Below, one piece after another: positions 38,301 through 63,834 of a stretch of 63,834 nt of DNA. The stretch's first letter is position 1, and each line of letters starts with the position of its first letter. Source of the DNA: Octopus bimaculoides (taxonomy: Eukaryota); the NCBI RefSeq assembly GCF_001194135.2, contig NC_068997.1, positions 19,213,447-19,277,280 on the forward strand, read 5' to 3'. Both the position numbers and the translations under genes were made by a program. The notes beneath the pieces were generated by a model. It was given only the letters and a program-made list of their open reading frames with translations. It was not told the DNA's origin and did not search any database.

Positions 38301-38392
38301 ATGATATATTCCTTGGTGACCCTAATGGTAAAGAGTTGATGTTAACATTTAAAGGATTCGATTTCCTTGATAATGAACTTGAAGAAGTTGAG
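38301..38392 (+). CDS. fry: fry exon 30 (DIFLGDPNGKELMLTFKGFDFLDNELEEVE)
   Basis: tttcag acceptor, GTGAGT donor, FDFLDxELE motif. Confidence 0.94.
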
Positions 38393-39673
38393 GTGAGTCA
38401 AGATTTTTCTAATTAAAACAATAGTACTTTATTATTTGTTTTTTCAGCTGAGATTGTTACTTGAAAGTCAGAACGGTAGAGCACCTAATTAATTATTTTG
38501 TTGTAATGGTCCTTTATGTGGTGAGTTCAAATCTCATGGATGTTAACATTGCTTTTTATTCTTTCAGGGTCAATGAAAATAAATACTAGTCGTGTCCCGA
38601 GAGTGGGGATATAATCAACCGTACTCTCACTCAAAGTTTGTAACATTGTCTCTATATCAGAAACCACCACCATCATCATCATCACCACCATCATTATTAG
38701 TATTTTTGTTATTAATGTATAGTAGGGCAGTGGTTTGGCAAAAATGTCAGAGCTTTAGGAAAAAATGCTTTGCAATATTTCTTCTGACTTTTTATGTTCT
38801 GAGTTCAAATCCTACTGATTCCAACTTCCATTTCATTGGGGTTGATAAAATAAAACCTCAGTCAAATGCTGGGGTTGATGTCATTAACTAACCCCAATAC
38901 CCAACATTTCCAGCTTTGTGCCTAAATTAGAAGGTTCATCATCATTATTATCATAATATGATGAGCTGAGAGAATTGTCAGCATCCTAGACAAAATGCTT
39001 TGTAGCATTTCATCTGTCTTTACATTCTGAGTTCAAATTCCACTGGGGTCGACTTTGCATTTCATACTTTCGGGTTGAATGAAATAAGTATCAGCTGCAC
39101 ACTGGTTTGATGTTATTGACTAACCCCTCCTACCAAAATTTCAGGCAATGTGCCTATAGTAGTTTAGTGTGTCAGGTGTGTAGAAAAAGTTGAAGACTGT
39201 TTTACCATAACAGATAAAAGATATCTGATGATGAGTGAAGAAGAAAACAATCCAAAGGTAGAGTAAACGGAAGTATAGGTGGAGGGAAACAACTTTCATC
39301 TAAAAACCACAAAGTTGACAATTGGGGAAAATGATAATCTTATTAACAACACCTCACTCCTTTCAGACATTTTAGAATATTTAAGTAGTTTCAAAATTTA
39401 CCTTGTTACAATATTCTACACATTTTGATTCCCTCCCACCAAGTAGAGACATATAGTAGATCTCTGCGATTATTTGATAAGTCTCTTAATTTTCATTTGA
39501 GTTAACAACCAATTCTTTGAAGTCCTTTTAAATATCTGTACTGAACTATCAGCCGCACCTGATGTACTTTAGGATTTTTCATACAGTCATTTTCATTTTT
39601 GTTACCCACTTCTTTTTTTATTTTATATATTTTTATTTAACATTTTGATTTTTGATTTTATGTATTATATATA

Positions 39674-39718
<45 letters not shown>

Positions 39719-40739
39719 TTTAGAGAAAAAAACCACAATTCCTGAATTCATCCATGAAAATTCACAGTCACATATAGAAAAATTTAATAAGTAAATACAC
39801 TANNNNNNNNNNNNNNNNNNNNNNNNNNNNNNNNNNNNNNNNNNNNNNNNNNNNNNNNNNNNNNNNNNNNNNNNNNNNNNNNNNNNNNNNNNNNNNNNNN
39901 NNNNNNNNNNNNNNNNNNNNNNNNNNNNNNNNNNNNNNNNNNNNNNNNNNNNNNNNNNNNNNNNNNNNNNNNNNNNNNNNNNNNNNNNNNNNNNNNNNNN
40001 NNNNNNNNNNNNNNNNNNNNNNNNNNNNNNNNNNNNNNNNNNNNNNNNNNNNNNNNNNNNNNNNNNNNNNNNNNNNNNNNNNNNNNNNNNNNNNNNNNNN
40101 NNNNNNNNNNNNNNNNNNNNNNNNNNNNNNNNNNNNNNNNNNNNNNNNNNNNNNNNNNNNNNNNNNNNNNNNNNNNNNNNNNNNNNNNNNNNNNNNNNNN
40201 NNNNNNNNNNNNNNNNNNNNNNNNNNNNNNNNNNNNNNNNNNNNNNNNNNNNNNNNNNNNNNNNNNNNNNNNNNNNNNNNNNNNNNNNNNNNNNNNNNNN
40301 NNNNNNNNNNNNNNNNNNNNNNNNNNNNNNNNNNNNNNNNNNNNNNNNNNNNNNNNNNNNNNNNNNNNNNNNNNNNNNNNNNNNNNNNNNNNNNNNNNNN
40401 NNNNNNNNNNNNNNNNNNNNNNNNNNNNNNNNNNNNNNNNNNNNNNNNNNNNNNNNNNNNNNNNNNNNNNNNNNNNNNNNNNNNNNNNNNNNNNNNNNNN
40501 NNNNNNNNNNNNNNNNNNNNNNNNNNNNNNNNNNNNNNNNNNNNNNNNNNNNNNNNNNNNNNNNNNNNNNNNNNNNNNNNNNNNNNNNNNNNNNNNNNNN
40601 NNNNNNNNNNNNNNNNNNNNNNNNNNNNNNNNNNNNNNNNNNNNNNNNNNNNNNNNNNNNNNNNNNNNNNNNNNNNNNNNNNNNNNNNNNNNNNNNNNNN
40701 NNNNNNNNNNNNNNNNNNNNNNNNNNNNNNNNNNNNNNN

Positions 40740-40774
<35 letters not shown>

Positions 40775-42360
40775 TGTGTGTGTGTATGTATAACACCAAC
40801 CTCTTTTTCGTTCATATTTTTCATAATCCCAGTTTGATCTTCTGCTTCTTTTTGTAACACAACCCTTAAAATAGTTCATTCACAAGCCAACAATGGAACG
40901 TAGTCACTTCACTGTGATCAGACCCGCAGCAATAGCAGATAAACTTGCCTACTTTTTTTTTTTTAAATTGAAAGAACACACTGTGTCATTTAGTCCTAAA
41001 CACACTGCTTCTTGGAAAGAAAAAAATGTCTGATGGTTACAGGTGAAACCCGTGAGTCATGTTTTCTCAGATTGAGCTGATCTAGAATTAAACAACTGAC
41101 AGTTTGTTAAAAATACAATCTTTTCACCTGTATTAATATTGACACTTAAATTATTTCACAAGCTGGAAGTTGAATTACATCAGTGGGGGAAAGAGTGGAA
41201 GGATCAATATATAGGTGCAGATATGGCTGTGTGGTTAAGAAGCTCATTTTGCAATCATGTGGTTTCAGGTTCCGTCTCACTGTGTGGCAATTTGGGCAAG
41301 AAATGTTAGCACGCCGGGTGAAACGCTTAGCAGTATTTCATCTGTCTTTACGTTCTGAGTTCAAATTCCACTGAGGTCGACTTTGCCTTTCATCCTTTCG
41401 GGGTCAATAAATTAAGTACCAGTTGCATACTGGTGTCATTCTAATCGACTGGCTCCTCCGCCAAAATTTCAGGCCTTGTGCCTAGAGTAGAAAAGAATAT
41501 TAGAGCAGTTATCTTTCAGTAACTTCCACATTATCCAGAGACCCATTATTGGTTTAAAACCTTCAACTGTGTCACCTTTAATTTGGTCTTTCCAATGCAA
41601 AACAATCATACTTTGGGTCATCCTCTTTTTTACTCTTCAAAAGTTCTTTACTGCACAGGATATCATTTAATTATTTAATTATTATCACAGAGCAGGAAAA
41701 TCCTTATATTTCTCAACCATGATGGCTTTATTAGCAACATTCTCTTAGAGAAAGTCCTCCTTGCTATTTGGTGCCTCGTCTTGTATCCAGTATCATACTG
41801 CACACACAAGGTAAATCTCTGACGAAGCAACCCTAATTCCCACACACTGTATTCCTTCTCCAAGTCATCATATTCACATACAGTCTAGGTTTGGTTGACG
41901 TAAAACCAACAGAGCCATAATTTCTGACAGTAACCTTTCTATTACTCTGAAATAAAGCATCCCAGACTTAACTTCCATACTTGCCTAACCCTTCGGTCTC
42001 TCTCTGTGGTCACTAAACCAGCTATTTCTAGCAGGTTTAGCAACCAAATAGATGGTCTCATGTGGGATCATGAGCATCAATGTGTTGCTATATATATGTT
42101 ACTGTCATAAAAACTGTATCATTCATTTCCAATATACTGTGAAAAAGCATCTGGCTATGAGGAAATATAATCTTGCTTGGAAATAGGTGAGGGTTAGCAA
42201 CAGGAAAGGCACCCTTGAATGAAGGGGAAAGTGGATGTGAAAATGAGGATAACAATGATATCCCAACTTCCATCATTATCAACATTTCAATGTTTGTCAC
42301 ACCTTGTTTGCATTGATGGATAGGTTTTATCCAGCACTACATCTTCCCCACCATCACAAT

Positions 42361-42835
42361 CCTTTTTATTTTCTTGTTGAGGCTCAGAATCCTTAGGCTG
42401 GTTTTCCACCACTTTGTGTTCCACATTTTCCTAGCTCACTCTCCTCCATAGGTTCCATCCATTTTCAGTGCCCCACACTGCTTTATACAGCTATCTTCCT
42501 CCATATGCTTTATATGCCTATAACAGCACAATCTTGTGTCTTGCATACCACATTTGATGCCTCTTATGTCTAGTTTTTTTTCCATTTCTCAGGTCTCTTG
42601 TGCTTTTCATTCATATACACTAACGTTACACATCTACTGGATTATACCAGTTTCATTTCCTTTAACTCTGAGCAAATTCTTGGCATTCAAGTCTCTTGTC
42701 TCACTCACCACCATACAATTTGTTCTTCACTCTGAGAGAAGAACCCTGTGTAATAAGCAGAGCTTGTTGCTCCCTGAACATTTCGCAAACACTTCTTACT
42801 CTGGTAAACTAAGCTTTCAGAATATTCATGTGCCT
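42361..42835 (-). mobile_element. Degenerate RTE LINE relic (RT C-terminal region)
   Basis: Minus-strand translation includes ...MCNVSVYE...IRGIKCGMQDTRLCCYRHIKHMEEDSCIKQCGALKMDGT..., with stops. Confidence 0.7.
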
Positions 42836-43629
42836 TTACTAATTAGGTCATTTTGGTAACAATAACATAAGCTATCAACTATTCAAGGGAGCCTTCTGAG
42901 CATTTCAAAGACTCTTTTTCATTGGTGGTTTTCATGCTTACTGAATTTATGCATCTGCAGCATATAAAGTCTATCACTTCTGTTCATCTGCTTATGACTT
43001 CACTACATCTCTTGTGTATCAATGGTTATACTGGGTACACTGTAAGGAATTTCTACCAACTTCTTTTCTGCATATTGAGCATGGTCATTTCATTGATGGT
43101 ACCAACATCATATCTTCTTTTTTATTCAGTAAAATTTTTGTTCATACTAAGTTTACTTAGAGGTATCTTCATTTTAAGTTTTGCTTCCCTTTCTGGAATT
43201 TTCTCACCAAATAGCTGACCAATTCTGTTATAAGAACTAAGTTATTAGCTTATTGGAGTTTTCACAGCTAGCTGCTCTTAAACTCCTTCATTATGGCCAG
43301 TTATAAATATCCAAGAAAAGAAAATTCATGCAAATAAATATATTTCTTCATTACTGGTTCCAGCTAATTAGGTTTGGTCGTGCTGAGGCAATTCAATTGA
43401 TTCTCTGTAATTCGTTTACTTTTCAAAATTAATGAATTTTGTGGATCTCTTGTACTGAAGTCAGCGAAGATTACTACCATACAACAAAATTTCTTTGGCT
43501 GTTTTGTCTTACATCATATATGTTATATTGAAAATAAAATAAACACCATTATCTTACTGGTTTCAATTATTGGGTGATGGCCATGCTGTACCTCCCATGA
43601 AATTCAAGAAAGATGATAATATTCATATA

Positions 43630-44790
43630 AAGTGTAACCTTTCTTGGACTCTTGTCCCTTATATTAGTCACATCTTGAACATTATACTTTTACAGTCCGA
43701 GAGCAGAAGATAACTATGATATATCTAATGAACAAATGGGACAGAGGAGCCCCTTAAACTCCTAAAGTACAAATGCAAATGTTGATAATGTTACACTTCT
43801 GCAATTAAAATAATGCATGTAATCAGCAGCTCTCCAAAAATATCATTGAGGAAATACGTCTTGCGTGAAAAAGTGCCACACCCTAACAGTTGAGGGAACC
43901 CGTGGAAGAGGTAGGCCCAGGAAGACCTGGGCTGAGGTGGTGGGGCAAGACCTTCGTACATTGGGCCTCACCGAGGCGATGACTACTGACCGAGACCTTT
44001 GGAAATGTGCTGTGCGTGAGAAGACCCGGCAAGCCAAGTAAGATCATTGCCAGTGCCCCTGGACTGGCTCTTGTGCGGGTGGCACATGAGATGCACCATT
44101 TTGAGCGTGGCCGTTGCCAGTACTGCCTGGCTGGCTCCCGTAGGATTTTCGAGTGAGATCGTTGCCAGTGCCCCTGGACTGGCTTNNNNNNNNNNNNGAC
44201 TGGCTTGTGCGGGTGGCACATAAAAGACACCATTTCGAGCATGGCCGTTTTCGTGCGGGTGACACGTAAAAGCACCCACTACACTCTCTGAGTGGTTGGC
44301 GTTAGGAAGGGCATCCAGCTGTAGAAACTCTGCCAAATTAGATTGGAGCCTGGTGTTGCCATCCGGTTTCACCAGTCCTCAGTCAAATCGTCCAACCCAT
44401 GCTAGCATGGAAAGCGGACGTTAAACGATGATGATGATGATGATGATGTAAGGCATGATATTGTTGCTAAAACAATATAACAACACCAACTGCAGAAAAG
44501 TCTGCTCTGGATGAATATAAACAACATTTCTGCTATTGAATACTTAGATATTATCACAGGGAATTGTCATCAAAACATCTACCAAGTACAAACATAGCAG
44601 GCCTGATATAGTCATTTGGAAAAGAAAAGAAAACTTACATATAGTCATAGAGGTAAACTGCCCTATAGATATGAGTGTCTTTTACAAAATCAGAAAGAAG
44701 AAGAGTTCTTATGGACAACTGCTTTGAAATCTATTGCTCTTTTATCGTGATTATAAATTCACATTCATTCAATAACCATTTGTGCATCCT
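43630..44790 (+). mobile_element. RLE-type (R4/Dong/CRE-like) non-LTR relic, interrupted by the RTE copy
   Basis: VREQKITMIYLMNK ... CYTSAIKIMHVISSSPK [insertion] RHDIVAKTI ... KHSRPDIVIWKRKENLHIVIEVNCPID...Y: CCHC knuckle plus PD-(D/E)xK endonuclease motifs. Confidence 0.7.
43850..44448 (+). mobile_element. 5'-truncated RTE-clade LINE: ORF C-terminus, 3'UTR and (GAT)n tail
   Basis: 43850-44041 translates as GNTSCVKKCHTLTVEGTRGRGRPRKTWAEVVGQDLRTLGLTEAMTTDRDLWKCAVREKTRQAK*. It is followed by an internally repetitive UTR ending in GGACGTTAAACGATGATGATG. Confidence 0.85.
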
Positions 44791-44840
44791 TTTACAAAGA
44801 ATTCTAATGAAAAAAAAAACAGGCAAATAATGAAGTCATA

Positions 44841-44902
<62 letters not shown>

Positions 44903-46527
44903 CATACATACATACATACAATAAACACATACATTCACATACATACAAGCCAATGAGTGGAATGACAATGTAAGGCAAGCTTCTGCATGGTCACACCACA
45001 AACTAGATATAACTGCCAAATCCCCTTAAAATTACTCTCTTTCATCTGAACAAAAAAACGTATGTTAGATAATGTTGTTTTGGTTTCATAATGCATAGGA
45101 AAAGACTGCATTGTCACAGCTGGATTGTTTTTCATCAAAGATCTATTCAATCAGGTTTACTCTGAAGTTTAACAGTAATGTACACATGTACATACATCTG
45201 AGTCAACATGGCAGGAGGAAAGACTTTTACATGAACCACTTGATCGACTAGAAATAGTAGTTAATTCCCTCTCAATCAAAACACTGTGTAGAAAAAAAAA
45301 AGAACACATTGAATGATGTATTCCTAGCTACAGCTAAGTAGATCATAGGTTTGCTCAAGTATTCACCTAGGATTAAATGATACAGATACATACAGACACT
45401 GTTGCACACACACAAATTCACACACACACACACACACACACGTATATATATTTATATAATTTAGAGAAAAACCACTATTAAATAATTCAATAAAGAATGT
45501 AATTCATACCCTCTAGAAAATAAATATATCATAAAAACCTTATTCAAAAACTCAATAAAATACATAAAAGAATAACTAATACATAGTATAAAATGACTAT
45601 GCACATTTCATGGCTATATTTTCAAATAGATAACTACTAAAACTAATTCAATTAATAATCAAATCTATTCAAAAATATAGTCACTCATCAGGTCTAAACT
45701 AATAAAATAATAATTAAAAAAATCAATGTACATATAACTTATACTAAATATCTAAAAAAAATACTTGTTTTAGCAATAAATAAATAATCAAAAAACATTT
45801 AACAATATTTCTTAAAATAAAAACACAACTTATCTGTGATGATGGCAGTCAACTCATGACCAAAGAAAACCATCATTGACCATTAAAAAACATTGTGAAA
45901 TCAGACAAAATTGATGGGGACTAATGAACCACAGCTCTTGATAGATATGCACATCCAAGAATACATATAATTTGCCCATGGGTAGTGTCATTTGTTTCAT
46001 TTCAGTGATAGCTATGTGTGTGTGTGTGTGTACACAATATTGACCATGTTCTTTTCCTTATGCTTTTTCATATAATAATTTTGATTAAAATTAACTGCAA
46101 CAGGAGACAAAAAAAAAAAGATAAACAAAGTTAACATTACTAAATAATTTAAATTTATTACTATATCAATTTGTTAATGTCTGTATATAAAAAATATATA
46201 TGTATATAATTTAGAAAAAAATTATTAATATAATACAAGATGAATTTATAAATACATAAACAATTTAATTAATGAATTATCATTTAATATTAAATATAAG
46301 TCTTATTTGATACGTAACATATTTTTTAAATTCTGTCTTACATTTATGCATATAGAGCCTAATATTATTTCATTATAATATAGTTTTCACATATATGTAT
46401 CAAAATGAAATTGATAAAGAAATTTGCATAACCAATTAATGATGTCAGGAAACTCCTGAAAGCTTTGTCTTTCTTGAAGTACATTCAATGTAAATCAGTC
46501 TAATACAATCCATTTCACCCCTGACAG

Positions 46528-46542
46528 AAGAAGCAAGATGAA
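46528..46542 (+). CDS. fry: Candidate 15-nt microexon (KKQDE)
   Basis: Branch-like CTAAT, then ccatttcacccctgacAG, 15 nt, GTAGGT; phase 0-0 like its host intron. No transcript evidence. Confidence 0.4.
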
Positions 46543-47148
46543 GTAGGTTAGCCTAGAAGTGAAATAGTGTCAGTTAGCTAGCTCCCCACCATTCTTCAGC
46601 ACTTGCATATATTCTCTGTGTGTGTATAAATATATTTACACTGAATCACTGCTTATACATTGAGGAAAAATTCCTGATAAAATTACTTTCTCATCACATT
46701 CAGCTAAATTAATTAATCTTATATTTGTTATGTAATAGTTATATAGTTGATGTTTTTATGTAAGTAATCAAAACAGCTGTAAAGCAAAACAAATGACACT
46801 TTTCAAATATGATTGAGATCTGTTTTCTATTCTTCATGTGTATATGGCCATTACCTGCATCTGTATGTACAGACCAGGGCAATATTGTTTTTTGGATGCA
46901 AGTCTCATCTCTCATATATACACACATATATACATGGCTGTCAGTTCAAATCCTACTGTGTAATGTGAAGTTCTCAGCAACCAGAGTTTGCTGCAAAATT
47001 AATTTAACTGAATACATATCTTCCAAAAAAAGGATGCCTTTGAGCCCAGCCAATGTTAGAAACAATTACTATTCATAGTAGTATGATCTATGTACATTTC
47101 ATTTTATTTTATTTTGTTTTGTTTTTTATTTACTGCTGCATTTCACAG

Positions 47149-47166
47149 GATTCCTATATCTTCAAG
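47149..47166 (+). CDS. fry: Candidate 18-nt microexon (DSYIFK)
   Basis: Long T-rich tract with TGCTGC, then tttcacAG, 18 nt, AAG/GTAAGG; phase 0-0. No transcript evidence. Confidence 0.6.
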
Positions 47167-48180
47167 GTAAGGTTTACTCCTACCTCACATCACCTGTGAT
47201 TTTTTTTGTTTTTGTTTTTTTTTGTTTTGTTTTATTCATTCTTTCAGAAGCTGAATAATAAAAACATACTTTGTTTCAGTATAAAAGGAATTAAAATGAC
47301 ATATAAATAATCATAATGAAATTACATACACAATAAAATTAAAGCAGAAAAGAAAAGGTTAATAGTTAGGTTAGACTTGACAGGGACATTTAATTTAGCT
47401 ATTTGATAAAAGGTTTCTAACAGGTCTCTAACAGCTGTTTCTAGAATATCCCAGCTACTGGAACATTGTGTCAAGTGAGGATTCCATAGGCCAAATATTC
47501 TCTCTCTGATGACAGTTTCAATAGCTTGGATATTCTAGAAAAAAACTATGTAGATCTTCTATTATGTAGCTAAATTGAATGTCCTTGTCAAGTCTTGTCA
47601 AATTGTTTGCCTTTTATTTTCTGCTTTAATGTGTACCTAAGAGCTCAAGAGGAAGCCACTTCTAGCTGCTTTCGAAAAGCAGTCACAAAATCATGTCTTC
47701 AACTGCAGTTCAAGCCGTAATTTTAATGGCATATCAATTTAAGCACTCAGAGCACATACTTATTAGTTTGAGCCACCCTGATAAAAACTCCTTGAATCTT
47801 TTAATAAAATGAATATGTAAGGAAGTAAAACTTGTGGTTGTAAACATTCTACATAAATTTACAAACTTAAAAGGACAAAACTGTACACATTGTAATATCC
47901 ATAGTATACATTTGTGAAAGATTTCTCAGGTTTTTCACAAATGTAATCATAACTATTCAGGCCTGTCACCTGACTTTGGTGCCTAGGGGTGCTTCAGAAT
48001 ATTCTGGATGGGTACTAATTTGTAATAATACTAAAACGGAGTTTCAAAATAAGTGTATCACTGTAAATCTGAGGGTGAACCATTGAATAGTGAGGGAGCA
48101 GTGTGCTGTCCAGAGTATCCCCTTAGTGATGGGCATGTAACTATTAGTAATTAGAATGCTATCAAACTCACATCCCACCA

Positions 48181-48224
<44 letters not shown>

Positions 48225-48544
48225 TTCTCTCTCTATCTATCTCATGAATGTACACAGTGGTAAAGACTGCAGTTGAAATTTTTTTTATACACATACATAC
48301 CCACATGACATTTGCAAACATCATAGTATTTTTATGAATTTAAGCAGCAAACATTTGATATTGAATGCCATACCAAACAAAATATTTGGCTGTATTTCAT
48401 CATTTGCTTTCACATTTCAAGTTCAAATTTAAACTGGTGTCAAACTTTACCATTCATTCATTGATAAAAATAGTTACCAGTCTAGGACTGAGGTCAATTT
48501 AATCAACTATTCCATCAAAATTCATATGCTTCTGCCTCAGTAAG

Positions 48545-48595
<51 letters not shown>

Positions 48596-49301
48596 CCACC
48601 ATCATAACATTTGCTAACTCACCAAGCATATCTTCATGTGACTCAAGCACACACACACATGGTTGTTTTTTCTTTATGTATGTATTTTATGTTGTGTTTA
48701 TGTTCACATATATATATATATTTTAACTGTAACTCTTGTCTTTTATGTGATATTTATATTGTGTAGTCTGTGTAATCCTGCAATTTTTATCACTTTATGT
48801 GAGCCTACCAACAAGGAAAAAATTGCCTTCCATCTTTTTGTGATGAAAATCTACATATACATATACACATGCGAAATAAGAACCAGTTCAATATTTTGTA
48901 TTTGATGGCAAAAAAAAAAAATTATATACTGGCTTATGAGGTGCACTCCGATTTCAACAATGATTCAAGAAAAAGAATTTTTAAAAGGTTAAAGGGTGTC
49001 TGACTTCACATTTAGAACCCTGAAAAGTTTTTTTTTTTTTTAGATCTGCATCTTATATACCATCAAATACAGTACAAGAATACTATTGAACCAGAAATAC
49101 ATGCCCACAACTGTCCTCTTATCCCTTGTCCTTTTTCCTTAATGGCATGTAAATTTTGGAGAAATTTTTTTGATTTTTTAGGTTATCTTCTCTTAGCAAG
49201 TGAAATTTGTCGAAAAATTAAGTATTAGTGAAGCACTGGGTCAATGTAAATAAATAGCCCACTCCCACAAAATTTCAGGTCTCGTGCCTTTAATAGAAAG
49301 G

Positions 49302-49334
<33 letters not shown>

Positions 49335-49440
49335 TAAGGTGGTGAGCTGGCAAAATTGTTAGCATGTCAGACGAAATGCTTAGTGACATTTCGTCTGTCT
49401 TTATGTTCTGAGTTCAAATTATTATTACGGTGAGAGATAA

Positions 49441-49666
49441 GGCGACGAGCTGCCAGAATCGTTAGCACACCGGGCAAAATGCTTAGCGGTATTTCGTCTG
49501 CCGCTACGTTCTGAGTTCAAATCCCGCTGAGGTCGACTTTGCCTTTCATCCTTTCGGGGTCGATAAATTAAGTACCAGTTACGCACTGGAGTCGATTACA
49601 TCGACTCCCCCTCCCCCTCCCCCCCCCAAAAAAAAATTTCAAGGCCTTGTGCCTAGACTAGAAATA
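49441..49666 (+). mobile_element. Young full-length family A SINE with target-site duplication
   Basis: Flanked by ATTATTACGGTGAGAGATAA (49421-49440) and ATTATTGCGGTGAGAGATAA (49667-49686). Confidence 0.88.
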
Positions 49667-50344
49667 ATTATTGCGGTGAGAGATAATGGTTGAAGGGGAA
49701 ATAAAAATGGCTTGCAATATGCAGTTATGTCCCCTGTGTATTCTGAATTTAAATCTTGCCGAAGGTTTATTTGCTTTTTATCTTTGTGAGGGTTTTATAA
49801 AATAAGTACTGCTTGCATACTATGATAGATTTAATCAACAATAAGCTCTCCACAAACTTGGAGCATCATATCTCAGAAAATATTTCAAATGTTTTGCCAC
49901 ATAAATCCTTTTAAACACTTCTTTTCGTTTTCAGTTGTTTATCCTTTGTTTTAAAGTTGAAATTGAAATTAAAAATCGTTATTATAATATTAGAGATTAT
50001 AAATATTAATTCAAGATAGAAAAGACCACCAGGTCTACTAACAAGACACAAATCAAGTATGTATCATTTGCTGTTAGTAGAATTGTTGTTCTTTCATAAT
50101 TCTGTCTCAAATTAATGTTTATCATGTCTGATATATAATTTATGCTACAAATGCTTGGCAGAATCGTTAGCATGCCAGGCGCGATGCTTAGTAGCATTTT
50201 GTCTGTCCTTACATTCTGAGTTTCAAGGTCGATGAAATAAATATAAGCTGAGTACTGGGGGGGGGGGTTTCGATGTAATCAACTAGTCACCTCCCCAAAA
50301 AATTTCAGGTCTTGTGCCTTTAGTAGAAAAGATTATTATAAACA

Positions 50345-50530
50345 TCACACAGTATACAATATCATGAGGTTGTTGACTGAAGATATTGTGTCAACCGGAG
50401 GTTTGTACTGGTCGTCAAGTCACAACAAGGACTCCACACAGACAGTACTTTACGCAATATGCGTGCAGTTCCAAATAATGCTGACTTTTGCAAAACATCT
50501 TATATTGTAGGGTATCTCTAAGGTTTTCAG
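50345..50530 (-). mobile_element. RLE-type (R4/Dong-like) LINE 3' end
   Basis: Minus strand KHLKTLEIPYNI / VLQKSALFGTARILRKVLSV, a C-terminal signature of this clade. Confidence 0.7.
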
Positions 50531-51055
50531 ATGTTTTTATCTATTATTATTATTATTAATATTAGTATTATTATTAAAGTGGTGAGCTTTCAGGATCATT
50601 TGCCCACTGGACAAAGTGCTTAGTGATTGTCTGTCTGTTTTTCCTTTTTGGGTTCAAATTCTGTTGAAGTTGACTTTGCCTTTCATTCATTCAGTGTTGA
50701 TAAAAGAAGTGGCAGTTCAGTTCTGAGGTATCAATGTAATCGACTTATCCACTCCCCTAAAATTTCAGGCCTTTTGCCAATAGTAGAAAAAACTATCATT
50801 ATTATTATCAACAGCAGTGAGCTGGCAGAATTGTTAGAGCATTGGCTCTTTAAGTTCTAAGTTCAAATCCCACCAAAATCAGCTTCAATAAATGCAAAGT
50901 ACTAGTCATGTACTGAGATTGATGTAATCAATTATATTATATATATTTCCTTTAAGATTACTAACCTTGTGCCAAAATTAGAAAGAATATCATTATTATT
51001 AAATAAAAATGTAATTATCGTATCTCACTTCTTTTTATATTTTCCTCTCTTTTAG

Positions 51056-51244
51056 CAAAAAGATGACTATTTCTCTTTGGGTGATCGTCGCTGTTCATTG
51101 AATCTCGATGCGACAGAATCTTCGTCAACATTGACATTTTTTGGCAGCGTACCTGATTTGAAACTGCTGGATAATTTCCCTGATGCCAAGAGTCTAACCC
51201 TGAAAGACAGTTCCAGTTTTCTGGAAGAGGTTTATTCAGATGAA
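51056..51244 (+). CDS. fry: fry exon 31 (QKDDYFSLGDRRCSLNLD...EEVYSDE)
   Basis: ttttag acceptor, GTAAGT donor, 189 nt; resembles the DNFNWGVRRRSL segment of vertebrate FRY (recalled). Confidence 0.9.
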
Positions 51245-51334
51245 GTAAGTAAGAAGAACTGAGCTTGGAATTTTGTTTTTGGTCAACTGGATTCAACAAA
51301 GAACATAAATGAATCTCAAATCTCATTTAGAGAT

Positions 51335-51370
<36 letters not shown>

Positions 51371-51885
51371 GTTAGACATACACACACACAAATACACTAC
51401 ACTTTATCTACATCTTGTCACTGTATTTTATATAGACAACACTGCTGTTTTTATGCTCATATACTAAACACATGTTTCCTCTCTAGCATAGTTATACAAT
51501 AAGAACTATTGTCTGCCACCTATGCTTCAAACCACGCAGTTCTGCAAAAGGACTGAATAGTCATCCGAGAGGTCATGGATGGAAAATCAGAAATGCCATT
51601 GCTACCAAGGAAGCACAATGTGATGGCAGTAATCTGTGAAGAGGGAACAACCACCATGTGTCTGTGTTTGTGTGTTAATTTAGTTATAAGTGTTCCTTAA
51701 GAAGCAAGTCATATCACCCTGTATGATGTCAGATGCCACGAAATGGCTAAGTACAAACACAGAGCTCATATATACATGTGTGTGTGTCTATACACACACA
51801 CACACACACAACACTTTATCCACATCTCATCTTTATTATATTTTATATAAACAATATATTTTCATACTTATATACTAAACATATC

Positions 51886-51933
<48 letters not shown>

Positions 51934-52084
51934 NNNNNNNNNNNNNNNNNNNNNNNNNNNNNNNNNNNNNNNNNNNNNNNNNNNNNNNNNNNNNNNNNNN
52001 NNNNNNNNNNNNNNNNNNNNNNNNNNNNNNNNNNNNNNNNNNNTGTCTGTCTGTCTAATCTGTCCGCCTGTTTTCTTCTCTGTC

Positions 52085-52115
<31 letters not shown>

Positions 52116-52749
52116 CTATCTATTTATCTATCTCTCTTTATCTTTTTTTACTTACAGAATTATTAAATGGCCATTGCTCTTCTCAAGAAATGTCTCTTTG
52201 AGTTTACTTGTATTAATTTTCTTCTCTTTTTTTTTTCCTTTATGATGTCCTTAGTTTTCTTCTTTGTTTTTCTCTTCTTATTTCTTCACAACCAAGGTCA
52301 ATCCACCCTGGGATTTTACCGAACAATGATGATGCTGATGATCCTAATTTTTCTTCTTCCACTTCTTCTTCTTCTTCTTAAACTAAATACTTTGAACATT
52401 TGGATATTCTGGTTTACTTGCTGTGAGTCTACATAGCACAATTCCTTTTGTTTTAGAATTCTGGTTACTATTACTCTTTAGGTCATATCACTCCCCATTT
52501 TTTCCATTGCTTTCTTTTTGTAGTTCTTCTCCACCAGCAATCAATATGTTAGTTAATTCTTATCTGGAGTATGTTACCTAAACCCCATCTGCAGCATGTT
52601 AGTTGTTAATCTTTATGTCTGTGCAATATTTAAGCCCCCCCCCCTACACACACACACACACACACACACTGCAATGTGTTGAGTAATTCCCCTCTGTTGT
52701 CTGTTAGTTAATTCTGAACTCATGTGTTAATTGATCTTTGTATCATTGT

Positions 52750-53530
52750 AAGAACTAATCTGTATCTTCTGTGTGTTAATTAATTCTCAAATCTAGTATA
52801 TTAGTTAATCCTTGTCTTCAGTATAATGAGTAACCCACGTCTGCCGTGTGTTAGTTAGTTATCCACTTGTGTGTTAGTTAACCCTTGTCTCAATGTAAGA
52901 GCTAATCCATGTCTGTTGTGTGTTAGTTAACCTTTGTCTTTAGTATAATAGTTAATCCACATCTGCTCTGTGTTAGTTAATCTTTGTCTCAATGTAAGAG
53001 TTAATCCATATCTTCTGTGTGTTAGTTAATCTTTGTCTCAATGTAAGAGTTAATCCATGTCTTCTGTGTGTTAGTTAATCTAGTATAATAGCTAACCCAC
53101 ATCTGTGTGTTGGTTAATCCTCAACTATGGTCTATTTCTGCTGTGTGTTAGTTAACCTTTATCTTTAGTATAATAGTTAATCTACATCTGCTGTATGTTA
53201 GTTAATCCTTGTCTCAATGTAAGAGTTAATCCATTTCTGCTGTATATTAATTAATCCTTGTCTCAATGTAAGAGCTAATCGATGTCTTCTGTGTGTTACT
53301 TAATCTTTGGTCTTTAGTATAAAAGTTAACCTACATCTGCTGTGTGTTAGTTAATCTTCAACTGCAGTGTATTTCTGCTGTGTATTACTCAACCTTTGTC
53401 TTTAGTAAAATAATTAATCCACATCTGCTATGTGTTAGTTAATCCTTGTCTCAATGTAAGAGTTAGTCCATGTCTGCTGTGTGTTGATCAATCCTAAACT
53501 GCGTTGCATTAGTTAATCCTTGTATTAATG
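52750..53530. repeat. Degenerate minisatellite, about 44-48 bp period (TGTGTTAGTTAATCCTTGTCTCAATGTAAGAGTTAATCCA...)
   Basis: The same motif recurs many times in tandem with divergence. Confidence 0.85.
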
Positions 53531-54550
53531 TGATAGATAGTTTGTTTTTTTTTGTTTCTGGCAAACTAGCACTTGTTTACTTATTCTTTTGTAATAATGT
53601 ACTGTTAATCCTAAACGTCATCTCCCTATTAAATCTACAGTACTGTTGGAAGTCAACATTTAGTGCTTGTATATCTGATATTTAATTCTGTGTATCACTA
53701 CAGATAATGAGCTAATGAGGCTGTTTTTAATTGTTCACCTGAGTTAGAACTTATGTAACTTGGCCAGTACTCAACCAAGTAATGATCCATTTAATTGGAT
53801 CTTTACTCAACAAAGTAATGACTCATTTAACTCGAGCATTGTTCATCTGAGTAATGGGTTATCTAACTGAAATATTGATTACCTGAGTATTTTCTCATAT
53901 AACTGTGTTATTACTTAGCTGAGTGTTGGTTCATTGAACTGACTCATCACTTGTTTGAGTGTAGCTCATTGCTAGTTTGAGTAACAGTTTATTTGACTAG
54001 GTTATTCAATTGAGTTAATATGAGTGGACCTTAAGGTGATGAGTTGGCAGAAATCGTTAGCAACATTTCATCCATCTTTGTGTTCTGAGTTCAAATTTGG
54101 CCAAGGTTGATTTTGTCTGTTATCCTTTCAAGGTCAATAAAATAAGTACCAGTTGAGCACTGGGGTCGATTTAATCAACTTACCCCTCCCCCAAAATTGC
54201 TGGCCTTGTGCCAGAATTTCAAATCAATATGAGTGGACCCTGGAAGTAGCATAGCTTGGGTATTGAATTTGACCACCCATTCTTTGACTATAACTTACTT
54301 TCAACATATGCTTACTCCTGCTCGACCCTCCCTGCCAAAAAAAAGTGCCACCATATGTAGTTTGTACACTATACACATATCCCTTGCAACACCACTGGGT
54401 CTTGGTATAGCTAAGTCAACTGCATTTTTTTTTTCCTTGTTAATCCAATTCAAAGAATATAATCCCATATGCAAAAGCAAGCCCTCACCTTAACCATCAT
54501 CTCACTTCTCAAACTGATCATTTTCATATTTGCATTTGTTTTCTCACCAG

Positions 54551-54672
54551 TCTCAAGCCTCTGGAGGTGATGAAGATGATGGTATGCCACAAGTCAACCA
54601 AAATGGATCTGCTTCATCTTACCAAAATCAGACTTTAACCAAAAGAAAAATTTTTCTTTTGAATTCTCCAAG
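54551..54672 (+). CDS. fry: fry exon 32 (SQASGGDEDDGMPQVNQNG...LLNSP)
   Basis: ctcaccag acceptor, GTTAGT donor. Supplies the phase 0 to 2 bridge to exon 33. Confidence 0.8.
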
Positions 54673-55181: not shown

Positions 55182-55711
55182 GAGTGAGAGAGCAAGGCAT
55201 ACCATCAACATGGCACTGGGGTAAAATATACGAAACCCAGAATACCCATCATGACTACCCATCTGATAAGGGTACACCAGGCACAAGCATCACGACCATA
55301 TGTGCATAACATGATAACCTTATATCAAGATAAACAGCACATGACCTTACGGGGTCAATAACATAGCTTCCAATCAAGTACTGGGGGGGTCAATGTAATC
55401 GACTTCCCTGCCCCTCAAACTTACTGGCCCTGGGCTAATATAATAAACAATTACTATTAAGGTGACAAGCTGACAGAAATGTTAGCATGCCGGAGAAATT
55501 GCTTTGTGGCATTTCATCTGTCTTTGCATTCTGAGTTCAAATTCTGCTGAGGTCAACTTCACCTGTCAACCTTTTGGGGTTGATAAAATATGTACCAGTC
55601 AAGTTCTGGGATCAATGAAATCAACTAGCTCCTTTGCCCCAAAATTTCTGGTGTCCATTGTAGTAAGGATTATTATCATTACTGTTATTATTATTATTAT
55701 TGGTGTTGTTG

Positions 55712-55788
<77 letters not shown>

Positions 55789-56165
55789 GTTGTTGTTGTT
55801 GTCATTATTGGCAAGCTGGCAGCATTGTTAGCACACCAGGCAAAATTCTTAGCAGCATTTCTTCTGTCCTTACATTCTGAGTTCAAATTCCACTGAGGTT
55901 GACTTTGCCTTTCGTCCTTCCGGGGTCAATAAATTAAGTACCAGTGTANNNNNNNNNNNNNNNNNNNNNNNNNNNNNNNNNNNNNNNNNNNNNNNNNNNN
56001 NNNNNNNNNNNNNNNNNNNNNNNNNNNNNNNNNNNNNNNNNNNNNNNNNNNNNNNNNNNNNNNNNNNNNNNNNNNNNNNNNNNNNNNNNNNNNNNNNNNN
56101 NNNNNNNNNNNNNNNNNNNNNNNNNNNNNNNNNNNNNNNNNNNNNNNNNNNNNNNNNNNNNNNNN

Positions 56166-56698: not shown

Positions 56699-57427
56699 GT
56701 TCGTGCTGCTTCTTTTCCATCTTGGTTTCAGTTTTGGCATCAGTTGAAAGGGGTTAACTGTTTAAATGATAATTATATATATATATATATNNNNNNNNNN
56801 NNNNNNNNNNNNNNNNNNNNNNNNNNNNNNNNNNNNNNNNNNNNNNNNNNNNNNNNNNNNNNNNNNNNNNNNNNNNNNNNNNNNNNNNNNNNNNNNNNNN
56901 NNNNNNNNNNNNNNNNNNNNNNNNNNNNNNNNNNNNNNNNNNNNNNNNNNATATGCAAAAAAGAAATGAAACTCACTACTTCTGACTTCTTAGTCTTAAT
57001 GTGTTACTACTGTTTGCAATGTTGAACTACAACTTGCCATGGTACCAATTTATGGCTTCATGAACTGGCCACTGAGAGCCAAGTGTTTTTTAGCTGCGGA
57101 CACAATGCGGTATTTCAACTGGCTTTACATTCTGAGTTCAAATTCTGCCAAAGTCGACTTCGCCTTTCATCCTTTCAGGGTCAATTAAATAAGTACCAAT
57201 TGCGTACTGGGGTTGATGTAATCGACTTAATCCCTTTGTCTGTCCTTGTTTGTTCCCTCTGTGTTTAGCCCCCTGTGGGCAATAAACAAATAAATATATA
57301 TGAACCCTCTGTAGCTTGACAACCTACTAAGTTGGCCTTCCAAACAGTATGCTTTCCATTTTTTCTTTTTTATAAATTTTGTTTGTGATCATTTCAGATT
57401 GATTGAACATTTTTTAATCTTTTATAG

Positions 57428-62875: not shown

Positions 62876-63293
62876 GTACAACAAATTGCATTTTTAATTT
62901 TTATCTTCTATAAAAATTTTTTTAAATACTTCACTCCTGAGGACAATAATGACGACGACGACGACGATGATGATGATGATGATGATAATTATTATTATTA
63001 CTTTTTTTTATTAAGGCAGCAAGCTGGCAGAATCGTTAGCACGCAAGGTGAAATGCTTAGTGGTATTTCATTAGTCTTCACGTTCCAATTCCTTCGAGCT
63101 GGCAGAATCGTTAACTCACCTGACGAAATGCTTAGCAGTATTTCGCCTGTCACTGAGTTCAAATTCCGCCGAGGTCGACTTTACTTTTCATCCTTACAGG
63201 GTCGATAAATTAAGTACCAGTTGAGTACTGGGGTCGATGTAATTGACTACCCACCTGCCCCAAATTTCAGGCCTTGTGCCTATAATAGAAAGG

Positions 63294-63335
<42 letters not shown>

Positions 63336-63834
63336 GTTATTATTATTGCTATTATTATTAAGGCGGCGAGCTAGCAGAAGCATTTGCACGTCAGGCAAGA
63401 TGCTTAGCAGCATTTCATCCATCTCTATGTTAGGAGTTTAAGATCTGCTGAGGTCAACTTTGCCTTTCATCCTTCCAGGGTCAATGAGATAAATTTTGCT
63501 GTTCATCCTTTCAAGCTCGATAAATTAAATACCAGTGAAAGACTGAGGTCAATGTAATCGACTTACTCCTCTCCACAAAATTTCAGGCCTTGTGCCTATA
63601 GTAGAAAAGCTTATTATTATTATTATTACTATTAAATTGAATAGACTACTGCTGCTCCAACACATCATCTCTGTATGTGTGTATAAGTACAAGTTATATT
63701 ATGCAATAGAAATTTCTGTAGGGTCAAAGGATCACCAAAACCCAAGCAGAGACCACAACAGGACAGTTTGCTTAGTATATAGAACTGATATGTAACAAGG
63801 TAAATGGAGAAAGAAACACACCCCTCCTCACTAC

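What the first reader, a model, noticed from the sequence alone, without database searches (positions are those of the whole stretch)
47100..47200. 18-nt frame-preserving microexon candidate with UGC motif (DSYIFK)
Seen: ...ttttatttacTGCTGCatttcacAG|GATTCCTATATCTTCAAG|GTAAGG, a strong acceptor and strong donor 18 nt apart, phase 0-0, in the longest intron (38393-51055). YCAY motifs lie just downstream. Established: SRRM3/4-type eMIC regulation of neural microexons relies on UGC close to the 3' splice site. Recalled, needs checking: vertebrate FRY/FRYL carry a tiny alternative exon at the equivalent junction after FDFLDxELE. Inference: a neural microexon of cephalopod Fry.
Basis: partly seen in the sequence, partly recalled or inferred. 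Interest (0 to 1): 0.75.

Follow-up and report, generated by a model that had tools for sequence, protein, structure and literature searches.

The report
Real alternative microexon in Furry gene
The 18-base stretch is a real, switch-like alternative microexon of the Furry gene, always seen spliced in together with a 27-base partner exon that the assembly does not show; this is an ordinary kind of feature, and its nerve-specificity is still unproven.

Summary
The sequence is as described: cacAG|GATTCCTATATCTTCAAG|GTAAGG at 47149-47166, phase 0-0, between exons 38301-38392 and 51056-51244 of a Furry (MOR2-PAG1) gene. It is the only acceptor/donor pair of that strength within 30 nt anywhere in the window, on either strand.

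RNA data settle its reality. In 4 of 9 assembled RNA runs the dominant transcript carries 45 extra bases at this junction: GGTTATGATAGCTACTCCTTTGATAAG (27 nt, GYDSYSFDK) followed by the candidate (DSYIFK). Five runs join 38392 directly to 51056. In three raw-read runs, 17, 20 and 19 reads cross into the inclusion form and no skip form is listed.

The 27-nt partner is absent from the window, probably hidden in an N gap. The two exons were seen only together.

Two close relatives keep the exon and both splice sites; the one exonic change is synonymous.

A UGCUGC at -15 to -10, an upstream-shifted U tract and a 65-nt AG-free zone fit the eMIC/SRRM code. Tissue labels are coded, so "neural" is untested. 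The YCAY claim is at background.

Vertebrate FRY/FRYL do carry 9- and 18-nt neural, eMIC-dependent microexons, but I could not test whether they sit at the same position.

Verdict: a new member of a known kind.

The parts
47149..47166 (+). 18-nt cassette microexon GATTCCTATATCTTCAAG (DSYIFK), phase 0-0
   Evidence: Sequence. Present in RNA contigs of X3, X4, X6 and X7 directly before 51056. Its first 4 nt follow the 27-nt exon in 56 raw reads. Skipped in X1, X2, X5, X8 and X9.
47147..47148 (+). 3' splice site AG (cacAG)
   Evidence: Unchanged in DNA contigs of related organisms B and C.
47134..47139 (+). UGCUGC at -15 to -10, candidate intronic enhancer of the SRRM/eMIC type
   Evidence: TGCTGC in this position range occurs at 5 of 3245 AGs on the + strand. 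Function is inferred from the published eMIC cis code (PMC8797185).
47096..47131 (+). U-rich tract ((AUUUU)n-like), a polypyrimidine tract shifted upstream of the UGC motif
   Evidence: tandem repeat 47096-47125. Only 14 of the 20 bases before the AG are pyrimidines (reasoning).
47082..47146 (+). 65-nt AG-exclusion zone upstream of the acceptor; branch-point-like UUUAC at 47129-47133
47167..47172 (+). 5' splice site AAG|GTAAGG, strong
   Evidence: Score 8.0 bits against 8.5 for the constitutive donor at 38393. 47167-47179 is unchanged in organisms B and C.
47185..47193 (+). Two YCAY tetramers (UCAC at 47185 and 47190)
   Evidence: Not above the window background, so probably not meaningful.
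38301..38392 (+). Upstream constitutive exon (...NDIFLGDPNGKELMLTFKGFDFLDNELEEVE), donor GAG|gtgagt
51056..51244 (+). Downstream constitutive exon (QKDDYFSLGDRRCSLNLD...VYSDE)
39803..40739 (.). 937-N assembly gap, the most likely hiding place of the 27-nt partner microexon GGTTATGATAGCTACTCCTTTGATAAG (GYDSYSFDK). The alternative is the 12-N gap at 44186-44197.
   Evidence: The 27-mer is in RNA but not in the window even with 6 edits or with G read as R. Gaps are listed. The location is an inference.

Best explanation
Window 47149-47166 is a genuine cassette microexon of the Furry gene.

Shown: it is used in a switch-like way and always together with a 27-nt microexon that lies upstream in the same long intron and is missing from this assembly. 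Including both adds 15 residues (GYDSYSFDK-DSYIFK) between ...FDFLDNELEEVE and QKDDYFSLGDRR..., in the region C-terminal to the MOR2-PAG1_C domain. This places two extra D-S-Y-x-F units next to the constitutive D-D-Y-F.

Inferred mechanism: the exon is too short for ordinary exon definition, and its proximal pyrimidine tract is interrupted. It is recognised only where an activator binds the UGCUGC at -15 to -10, most probably the neuron-restricted eMIC-containing isoform of Srrm234. That would help early U2-type complex assembly, while the strong GTAAGG donor recruits U1. Elsewhere both microexons are skipped and 38392 joins 51056.

Inferred consequence: the insert tunes a protein-protein contact or a phosphorylation site of Furry in the cells that include it.
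For: Reality and alternative use:
- Dominant contig includes 27+18 nt in X3 and X4 (depth 97, 128) and in X6 and X7.
- Dominant contig skips both in X1, X2, X5, X8 and X9.
- The X14 contig starts exactly at 51054, two bases before the exon, as an assembly would if two forms branch there.
- Raw reads X41-X43: 17, 20 and 19 reads continue from 38393 into GTTATGATAGCTACTCCTTTGATAAG+GATT with agreement 0.93-0.97, and no skip row is listed.

Uniqueness of the splice-site pair.

Cis code: UGCUGC, a 65-nt AG-free zone and an upstream-shifted U tract match the features reported for eMIC targets in fly and mammals (PMC8797185; PMC12871342).

Gene identity.

Purifying selection, weak evidence: organism B is identical over 47140-47179. 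Organism C has one change, 47160 C>T (ATC>ATT, Ile, synonymous). Intron differences begin at 47180.

Precedent: vertebrate Fry/Fryl carry neural, eMIC-dependent microexons of 9 and 18 nt.
Against: - No tissue label could be read, so neural restriction is not shown.
- In study P2 inclusion does not track transcript depth (inclusion at 73 and 19.6, skipping at 42.5 and 45.5).
- A single UGC near an acceptor is common (24% of AGs), and dependence on Srrm234 is untested.
- Conservation was seen only in two close relatives. In them the UGCUGC region could not be read, because T-rich repeat contigs swamp that part of the pile-up.
- The functional reading of the insert rests only on its repeated motif.
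- Fly fry alternative exons are classed as not eMIC-dependent.
Confidence: 0.6

Rival explanations
1. It is a real alternative microexon pair, but it is regulated by something other than the neural eMIC programme. Examples would be a muscle, gonad or developmental-stage switch driven by RBFOX, PTB, ELAV/TIA-type U-tract binders or general microexon factors such as PRP40. On this reading the UGCUGC is incidental.
For: - Half of the runs of unknown tissue include it.
- All three deep 2026 runs include it at high level, so inclusion is not rare.
- Inclusion does not follow transcript depth in study P2.
- Long U-rich tracts flank the exon on both sides (47096-47131 and 47200-47233).
- A single UGC is common by chance.
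- Fly fry alternative exons are not eMIC-dependent.
Against: - Tandem UGCUGC at -15 to -10 is rare (5 of 3245 AGs). Together with the long AG-free zone and the shifted pyrimidine tract it is the published eMIC signature.
- Vertebrate Fry/Fryl microexons are neural and eMIC-dependent.
- In study P1 the including runs have about 10-fold higher Furry depth. That would fit brain-enriched expression, but this is weak evidence.
Confidence: 0.3
2. The inclusion isoform is tolerated splicing variation with no function of its own. A strong donor and an adequate acceptor happen to lie 18 nt apart, and the frame is preserved by luck.
For: - The insert lies in a poorly conserved region that looks disordered. 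No homologue of the 109-residue segment was found in the protein database or the PDB.
- Conservation evidence covers close relatives only.
Against: - It is the dominant isoform in 4 of 9 contig runs and in all three raw-read runs.
- Inclusion is coordinated with a second in-frame microexon that encodes the same D-S-Y-x-F-(x)-K motif with different Ser codons (AGC vs TCC). That points to selection on the peptide.
- The only exonic substitution in a relative is synonymous.
- No comparable splice-site pair occurs elsewhere in 128 kb of two-strand sequence.
Confidence: 0.07
3. The candidate is not an exon, and the match is an assembly or paralogue artefact.
For: Logan contigs can be chimeric, and the 27-nt partner is not in the window.
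Against: - The same 45-nt insert with exact flanks appears in independent runs of three studies from 2015, 2020 and 2026, including unassembled reads.
- The 18 nt match the window exactly at a canonical AG/GT site.
- The missing partner is explained by N gaps in the intron.
Confidence: 0.02

Closest known systems
Vertebrate FRY/FRYL neural microexons: 18 nt (HsaEX0026454 in FRY, HsaEX0026468 in FRYL; zebrafish DreEX0033581, DreEX0033604, DreEX0033626; mouse Fryl MmuEX0019677) and 9 nt (mouse Fry MmuEX0019666, mouse Fryl MmuEX0019673, zebrafish fryl DreEX0033622)
   Same: Same gene family. All are frame-preserving microexons and cassette-type, and one class has the identical length of 18 nt. 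The vertebrate ones are annotated MIC_Neural and, in mouse, eMIC-dependent. FRY is among the neural microexons switched on during chick brain development (PMC12871342).
   Different: The position in the protein and the encoded peptide of the vertebrate exons could not be retrieved here, so orthology is untested. The octopus-type event is a pair (27 + 18 nt) used together. Its tissue pattern and regulator are unknown.
eMIC (Srrm234 / SRRM3 / SRRM4)-dependent neuronal microexon programme of bilaterians
   Same: Length 27 nt or less, a multiple of 3, switch-like use, UGC close to the 3' splice site, a long AG-exclusion zone and a long pyrimidine tract upstream of the UGC.
   Different: The tract here is U-rich rather than UCUC-rich. 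The 5' splice site is strong, as in mammals and unlike fly targets. Neural restriction and eMIC dependence are not shown.
Drosophila fry alternative exons DmeEX0008006 (30 nt) and DmeEX0008005 (144 nt)
   Same: Short alternative cassette exons in the protostome orthologue of the same gene.
   Different: They are classed as 'ASE', meaning not eMIC-dependent. Their position relative to the FDFLD junction is not known to me.

Membership tests
Microexon (alternative cassette exon of 3-27 nt) | Length 27 nt or less, bounded by functional AG and GT | tested here: met
   18 nt, cacAG|...|GTAAGG. Both junctions are used in RNA.
Microexon (alternative cassette exon of 3-27 nt) | Both inclusion and skipping isoforms exist | tested here: met
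   Inclusion in X3, X4, X6, X7 and X41-43. Skipping in X1, X2, X5, X8 and X9.
Microexon (alternative cassette exon of 3-27 nt) | Preserves the reading frame | tested here: met
   Phase 0-0, no stop codon.
Neural eMIC/SRRM-dependent microexon | Inclusion restricted to or strongly enriched in neural tissue | not testable with these tools
   Run, sample and organism names are coded, and no tissue marker outside the window can be laid.
Neural eMIC/SRRM-dependent microexon | UGC motif close to the 3' splice site, with a long AG-exclusion zone and an upstream pyrimidine tract | tested here: met
   UGCUGC at -15 to -10, AG-free zone of 65 nt, U tract at 47096-47131. The code is as described in PMC8797185.
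Neural eMIC/SRRM-dependent microexon | Inclusion depends on the eMIC domain of Srrm234/SRRM3/4 | not testable with these tools
   Needs knock-down, mis-expression or a minigene experiment.
Neural eMIC/SRRM-dependent microexon | Conservation of the exon and flanking intron across species | tested here: inconclusive
   Two close relatives keep the exon and both splice sites, with one synonymous change. Their intron divergence is only about 6-10%, the UGC region is unreadable, and no distant coleoid was available.
Furry / MOR2-PAG1 gene | MOR2-PAG1 middle and C-terminal domains encoded by the surrounding exons | tested here: met
   PF14228 at E 3.9e-16. PF14225 at 24.7 bits, against a cut-off of 25, on a partial exon. 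The C-domain exon is 80% identical to PF14225-annotated fragments from other animals.
Orthologue of the vertebrate FRY/FRYL 18-nt microexon | Lies in the homologous intron, with the same flanking exons | not testable with these tools
   No vertebrate or other animal proteome or genome can be reached. The PDB has no match. ENA contigs L002-L005 stop, or run into long introns, before the junction.
Orthologue of the vertebrate FRY/FRYL 18-nt microexon | Same length and phase | tested here: met
   18 nt in both. On its own this is weak, because many neural microexons are 18 nt.

The most novel reading that the evidence does not exclude
The octopus-type 18-nt exon, or the 27+18 pair, sits in the same intron as one of the vertebrate FRY/FRYL eMIC-dependent microexons and shares its neural regulation. 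That would make it one of the very few neuronal microexons retained from the bilaterian ancestor. The alternative is a clear case of a recurrent microexon 'hotspot' in Furry. In either case the pair would have arisen by tandem duplication of a D-S-Y-x-F-K unit. The 27-nt exon also contributes a Y-D-S-Y-S-F stretch that resembles the hydrophobic motif ([FY]-x-x-[FY]-[ST]-[FY]) of the NDR/LATS kinases that Furry scaffolds.
Probability: 0.15. Interest if true: 0.65.

Novelty: new member of a known kind. Interest (0 to 1): 0.38.

Why it matters
Neuronal microexon programmes are well mapped in vertebrates and flies but hardly at all in lophotrochozoans. Fly and mouse share only four eMIC exons at the same position (PMC8797185).

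A validated, switch-like microexon pair in Furry, with the eMIC cis signature, gives a concrete test case. Furry already carries eMIC-dependent microexons in vertebrates, so the question is whether such exons are inherited or re-invented in animals with independently evolved large brains.

It also flags an annotation problem. The partner exon is invisible in this assembly, so gene models built on it will miss 9 codons or mis-join the isoform.

In itself the feature is ordinary.

Tried and rejected
I switched to short stretches and read the 'loose ends'.
- Raw reads on 51010-51260 hid the upstream loose ends behind better-supported rows.
- The 27-nt exon was searched in the window exactly, with up to 7 edits, and allowing A-to-I editing (G read as R). 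It is absent. A 9-mer hit at 46006 behind a good acceptor was judged chance, because it runs into a (TG)n repeat with no usable donor.
- RNA runs of organism B (X19, X22) carried no Furry contig.
- A protein database search with the 109-residue junction peptide found no hits. The PDB gave none either.
- A degenerate microexon pattern found no match in metagenome contigs.
- Conserved-exon searches found only exon-sized fragments on ENA contigs. Loci L001-L005 were fetched, but none reaches the FDFLD junction.
- The supplements of two preprints are not held.
- YCAY/NOVA support was rejected as being at background.

Full report
**Observation.** The window reads ...ttttttatttacTGCTGCatttcacAG|GATTCCTATATCTTCAAG|GTAAGGtttactcc.... 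The candidate exon is 47149-47166, 18 nt, encoding DSYIFK.

RNA contigs fix the neighbouring exons at 38301-38392 (...NDIFLGDPNGKELMLTFKGFDFLDNELEEVE, donor GAG|gtgagt) and 51056-51244 (QKDDYFSLGDRRCSLNLD...VYSDE). Both boundaries facing the candidate are in phase 0, so the candidate is phase 0-0 as claimed.

I scanned with simple splice-site weight matrices of my own (not MaxEnt). At the candidate's own scores it is the only AG...(3-30 nt)...GT pair in the intron. It is also the only one in the whole window on the + strand, with none on the - strand. Relaxing both thresholds by 2 bits gives 2 on + and 0 on -. The pair is therefore well above chance.

The UGCUGC lies at 47134-47139, which is -15 to -10. 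One TGC in that zone is common (24% of all AGs), but the tandem form is rare (5 of 3245 AGs on the + strand). The previous AG is 65 nt upstream, and the long U tract lies upstream of the UGC rather than against the AG. The two YCAY tetramers downstream are at the background rate.

**Gene.** Concatenated window exons hit Pfam MOR2-PAG1_mid (E 3.9e-16) and the start of MOR2-PAG1_C. One C-domain exon is 80% identical to PF14225-annotated fragments from other animals. The gene is Furry. Organism names are coded, so I cannot confirm 'cephalopod', and nothing contradicts it.

**RNA evidence.** I therefore laid runs on each flanking exon and read the unaligned continuations.

- Contig runs that skip: X1, X2, X5, X8 and X9 join 38392 directly to 51056.
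- Contig runs that include: X3, X4, X6 and X7 carry 45 extra bases, GGTTATGATAGCTACTCCTTTGATAAG followed by GATTCCTATATCTTCAAG. The contig coordinates leave exactly 45 nt between the two flanking exons.
- Run X14: its contig starts exactly at 51054, two bases before the exon, as expected when two forms branch there.
- Raw reads from three 2026 runs (X41-X43): 17, 20 and 19 reads run from 38393 into the 27-mer plus GATT with agreement 0.93-0.97. Almost all reads reaching 38392 continue this way, and no skip row is listed.

The candidate is therefore a real exon, and it is alternative. In every case I could see it is used together with a 27-nt exon encoding GYDSYSFDK. I never saw 18 nt alone or 27 nt alone as the dominant form.

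**The hidden partner.** The 27-mer is not in the window, even allowing 6 edits or A-to-I editing. The intron holds N gaps at 39803-40739 and 44186-44197. The exon must lie between 38393 and 47148, most likely in the 937-N gap. This placement is an inference.

The two microexons encode the same unit: D-S-Y-S-F-D-K and D-S-Y-I-F-K. They use different serine codons (AGC and TCC). The constitutive exon that follows starts Q-K-D-D-Y-F. Inclusion thus extends an acidic-aromatic array from one unit to three.

**Conservation.** DNA contigs of two related organisms could be laid on 46960-47380. Intron divergence there is roughly 6-10%.

- Organism B is identical over 47140-47179.
- Organism C has a single change in that span, 47160 C>T. 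This converts ATC to ATT, both Ile.
- The first intron differences downstream are at 47180 and 47181.
- T-rich repeat contigs swamp 47095-47139, so the UGCUGC could not be read in these relatives.

This is consistent with constraint but statistically weak, and no distant coleoid could be examined.

**Mechanism.** Shown: a cassette pair with a binary outcome across runs. Inferred: the interrupted proximal pyrimidine tract, the UGCUGC at -15 to -10, the long AG-free zone and the strong donor reproduce the cis code reported for eMIC-dependent exons in fly and mammals (PMC8797185; PMC12871342).

In non-vertebrate bilaterians the eMIC activity is confined to neurons by processing of Srrm234 (abstract of PMC8797185). 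I therefore think neuronal, eMIC-driven inclusion is the most likely mechanism, at roughly 0.55-0.6.

Tissue labels are unavailable. In study P1 the including runs have about 10-fold higher Furry depth, but in study P2 there is no such relation. The main rival is regulation by another factor or in another tissue, at about 0.3.

**Comparison with known cases.** Supplementary tables list several Furry-family microexons.

- Zebrafish: 18-nt 'MIC_Neural' exons in frya, fryb and fryl, orthologous to HsaEX0026454 in FRY and HsaEX0026468 in FRYL. There is also a 9-nt exon in fryl (PMC12626424).
- Mouse: 'eMICdep' exons of 9 nt in Fry and of 9 and 18 nt in Fryl (PMC8797185).
- Fly: fry has 30-nt and 144-nt alternative exons classed as not eMIC-dependent.

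Whether one lies at the junction after FDFLDxELE could not be tested. No animal proteome or genome is reachable with these tools, and the fetched ENA contigs do not reach the junction.

Fly and mouse share only four eMIC exons at the same position, and fry is not among them. The prior for true orthology is therefore low.

**Verdict.** It is a new member of a known kind, of moderate-to-low interest unless step 4 of the next steps shows positional orthology.

Noticed in passing
between window 38393 and 47148 (probably N gap 39803-40739 or 44186-44197): A 27-nt microexon, GGTTATGATAGCTACTCCTTTGATAAG (GYDSYSFDK), is present in RNA of many runs but absent from the assembled window. Gene models built on this assembly will miss it.
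   Followed up: partly
window 52297 to about 52422: Run X4's dominant contig goes from 51244 into a further cassette exon (GTCAATCCACCCTGGGATTTTACCGAACAATGA...). Read in phase 0 it hits a TGA after 10 codons (VNPPWDFTEQ*). This is either a poison exon or a truncated Furry isoform lacking the C-terminal part. The other runs join 51244 to 54551.
   Followed up: partly
window 51172: T>C difference (GAT>GAC, Asp, synonymous). It is fixed in the X14 contig and in the X43 reads, and mixed in X41 and X42. It explains the 0.79 word share of several runs and is an ordinary polymorphism, not A-to-I editing.
   Followed up: yes
window 47096-47131 and 47200-47233: Long T-rich tracts flank the microexon on both sides. 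In genomic runs they attract thousands of contigs, so they belong to a very abundant low-complexity class. They could also be U-tract protein binding sites (ELAV/TIA/PTB type).
   Followed up: no
window, e.g. 27366-27467, 37698-37841, 49487-49690, 50627-50857, 55486-55893, 57000-57185, 63075-63554: A short interspersed repeat recurs in many introns. Its translation reads ...SNSAEVDFAFHPFRVDK(L/I)STS... It looks like a SINE-like family. Microsatellites such as (CA)n, (TC)n and (ATC)n are also very dense.
   Followed up: no
L004 12028-14517: In the Furry locus of an unidentified animal on an ENA contig, an 829-residue ORF with Exo_endo_phos and RVT_1 domains (a LINE-type retrotransposon) sits in the intron after the C-domain exons.
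   Followed up: no
27-nt exon peptide (not in window): Y-D-S-Y-S-F fits the loose consensus [FY]-x-x-[FY]-[ST]-[FY] of the AGC-kinase hydrophobic motif, as found in the NDR/LATS kinases that Furry scaffolds. This rests on my own recall of the motif and has not been tested.
   Followed up: no
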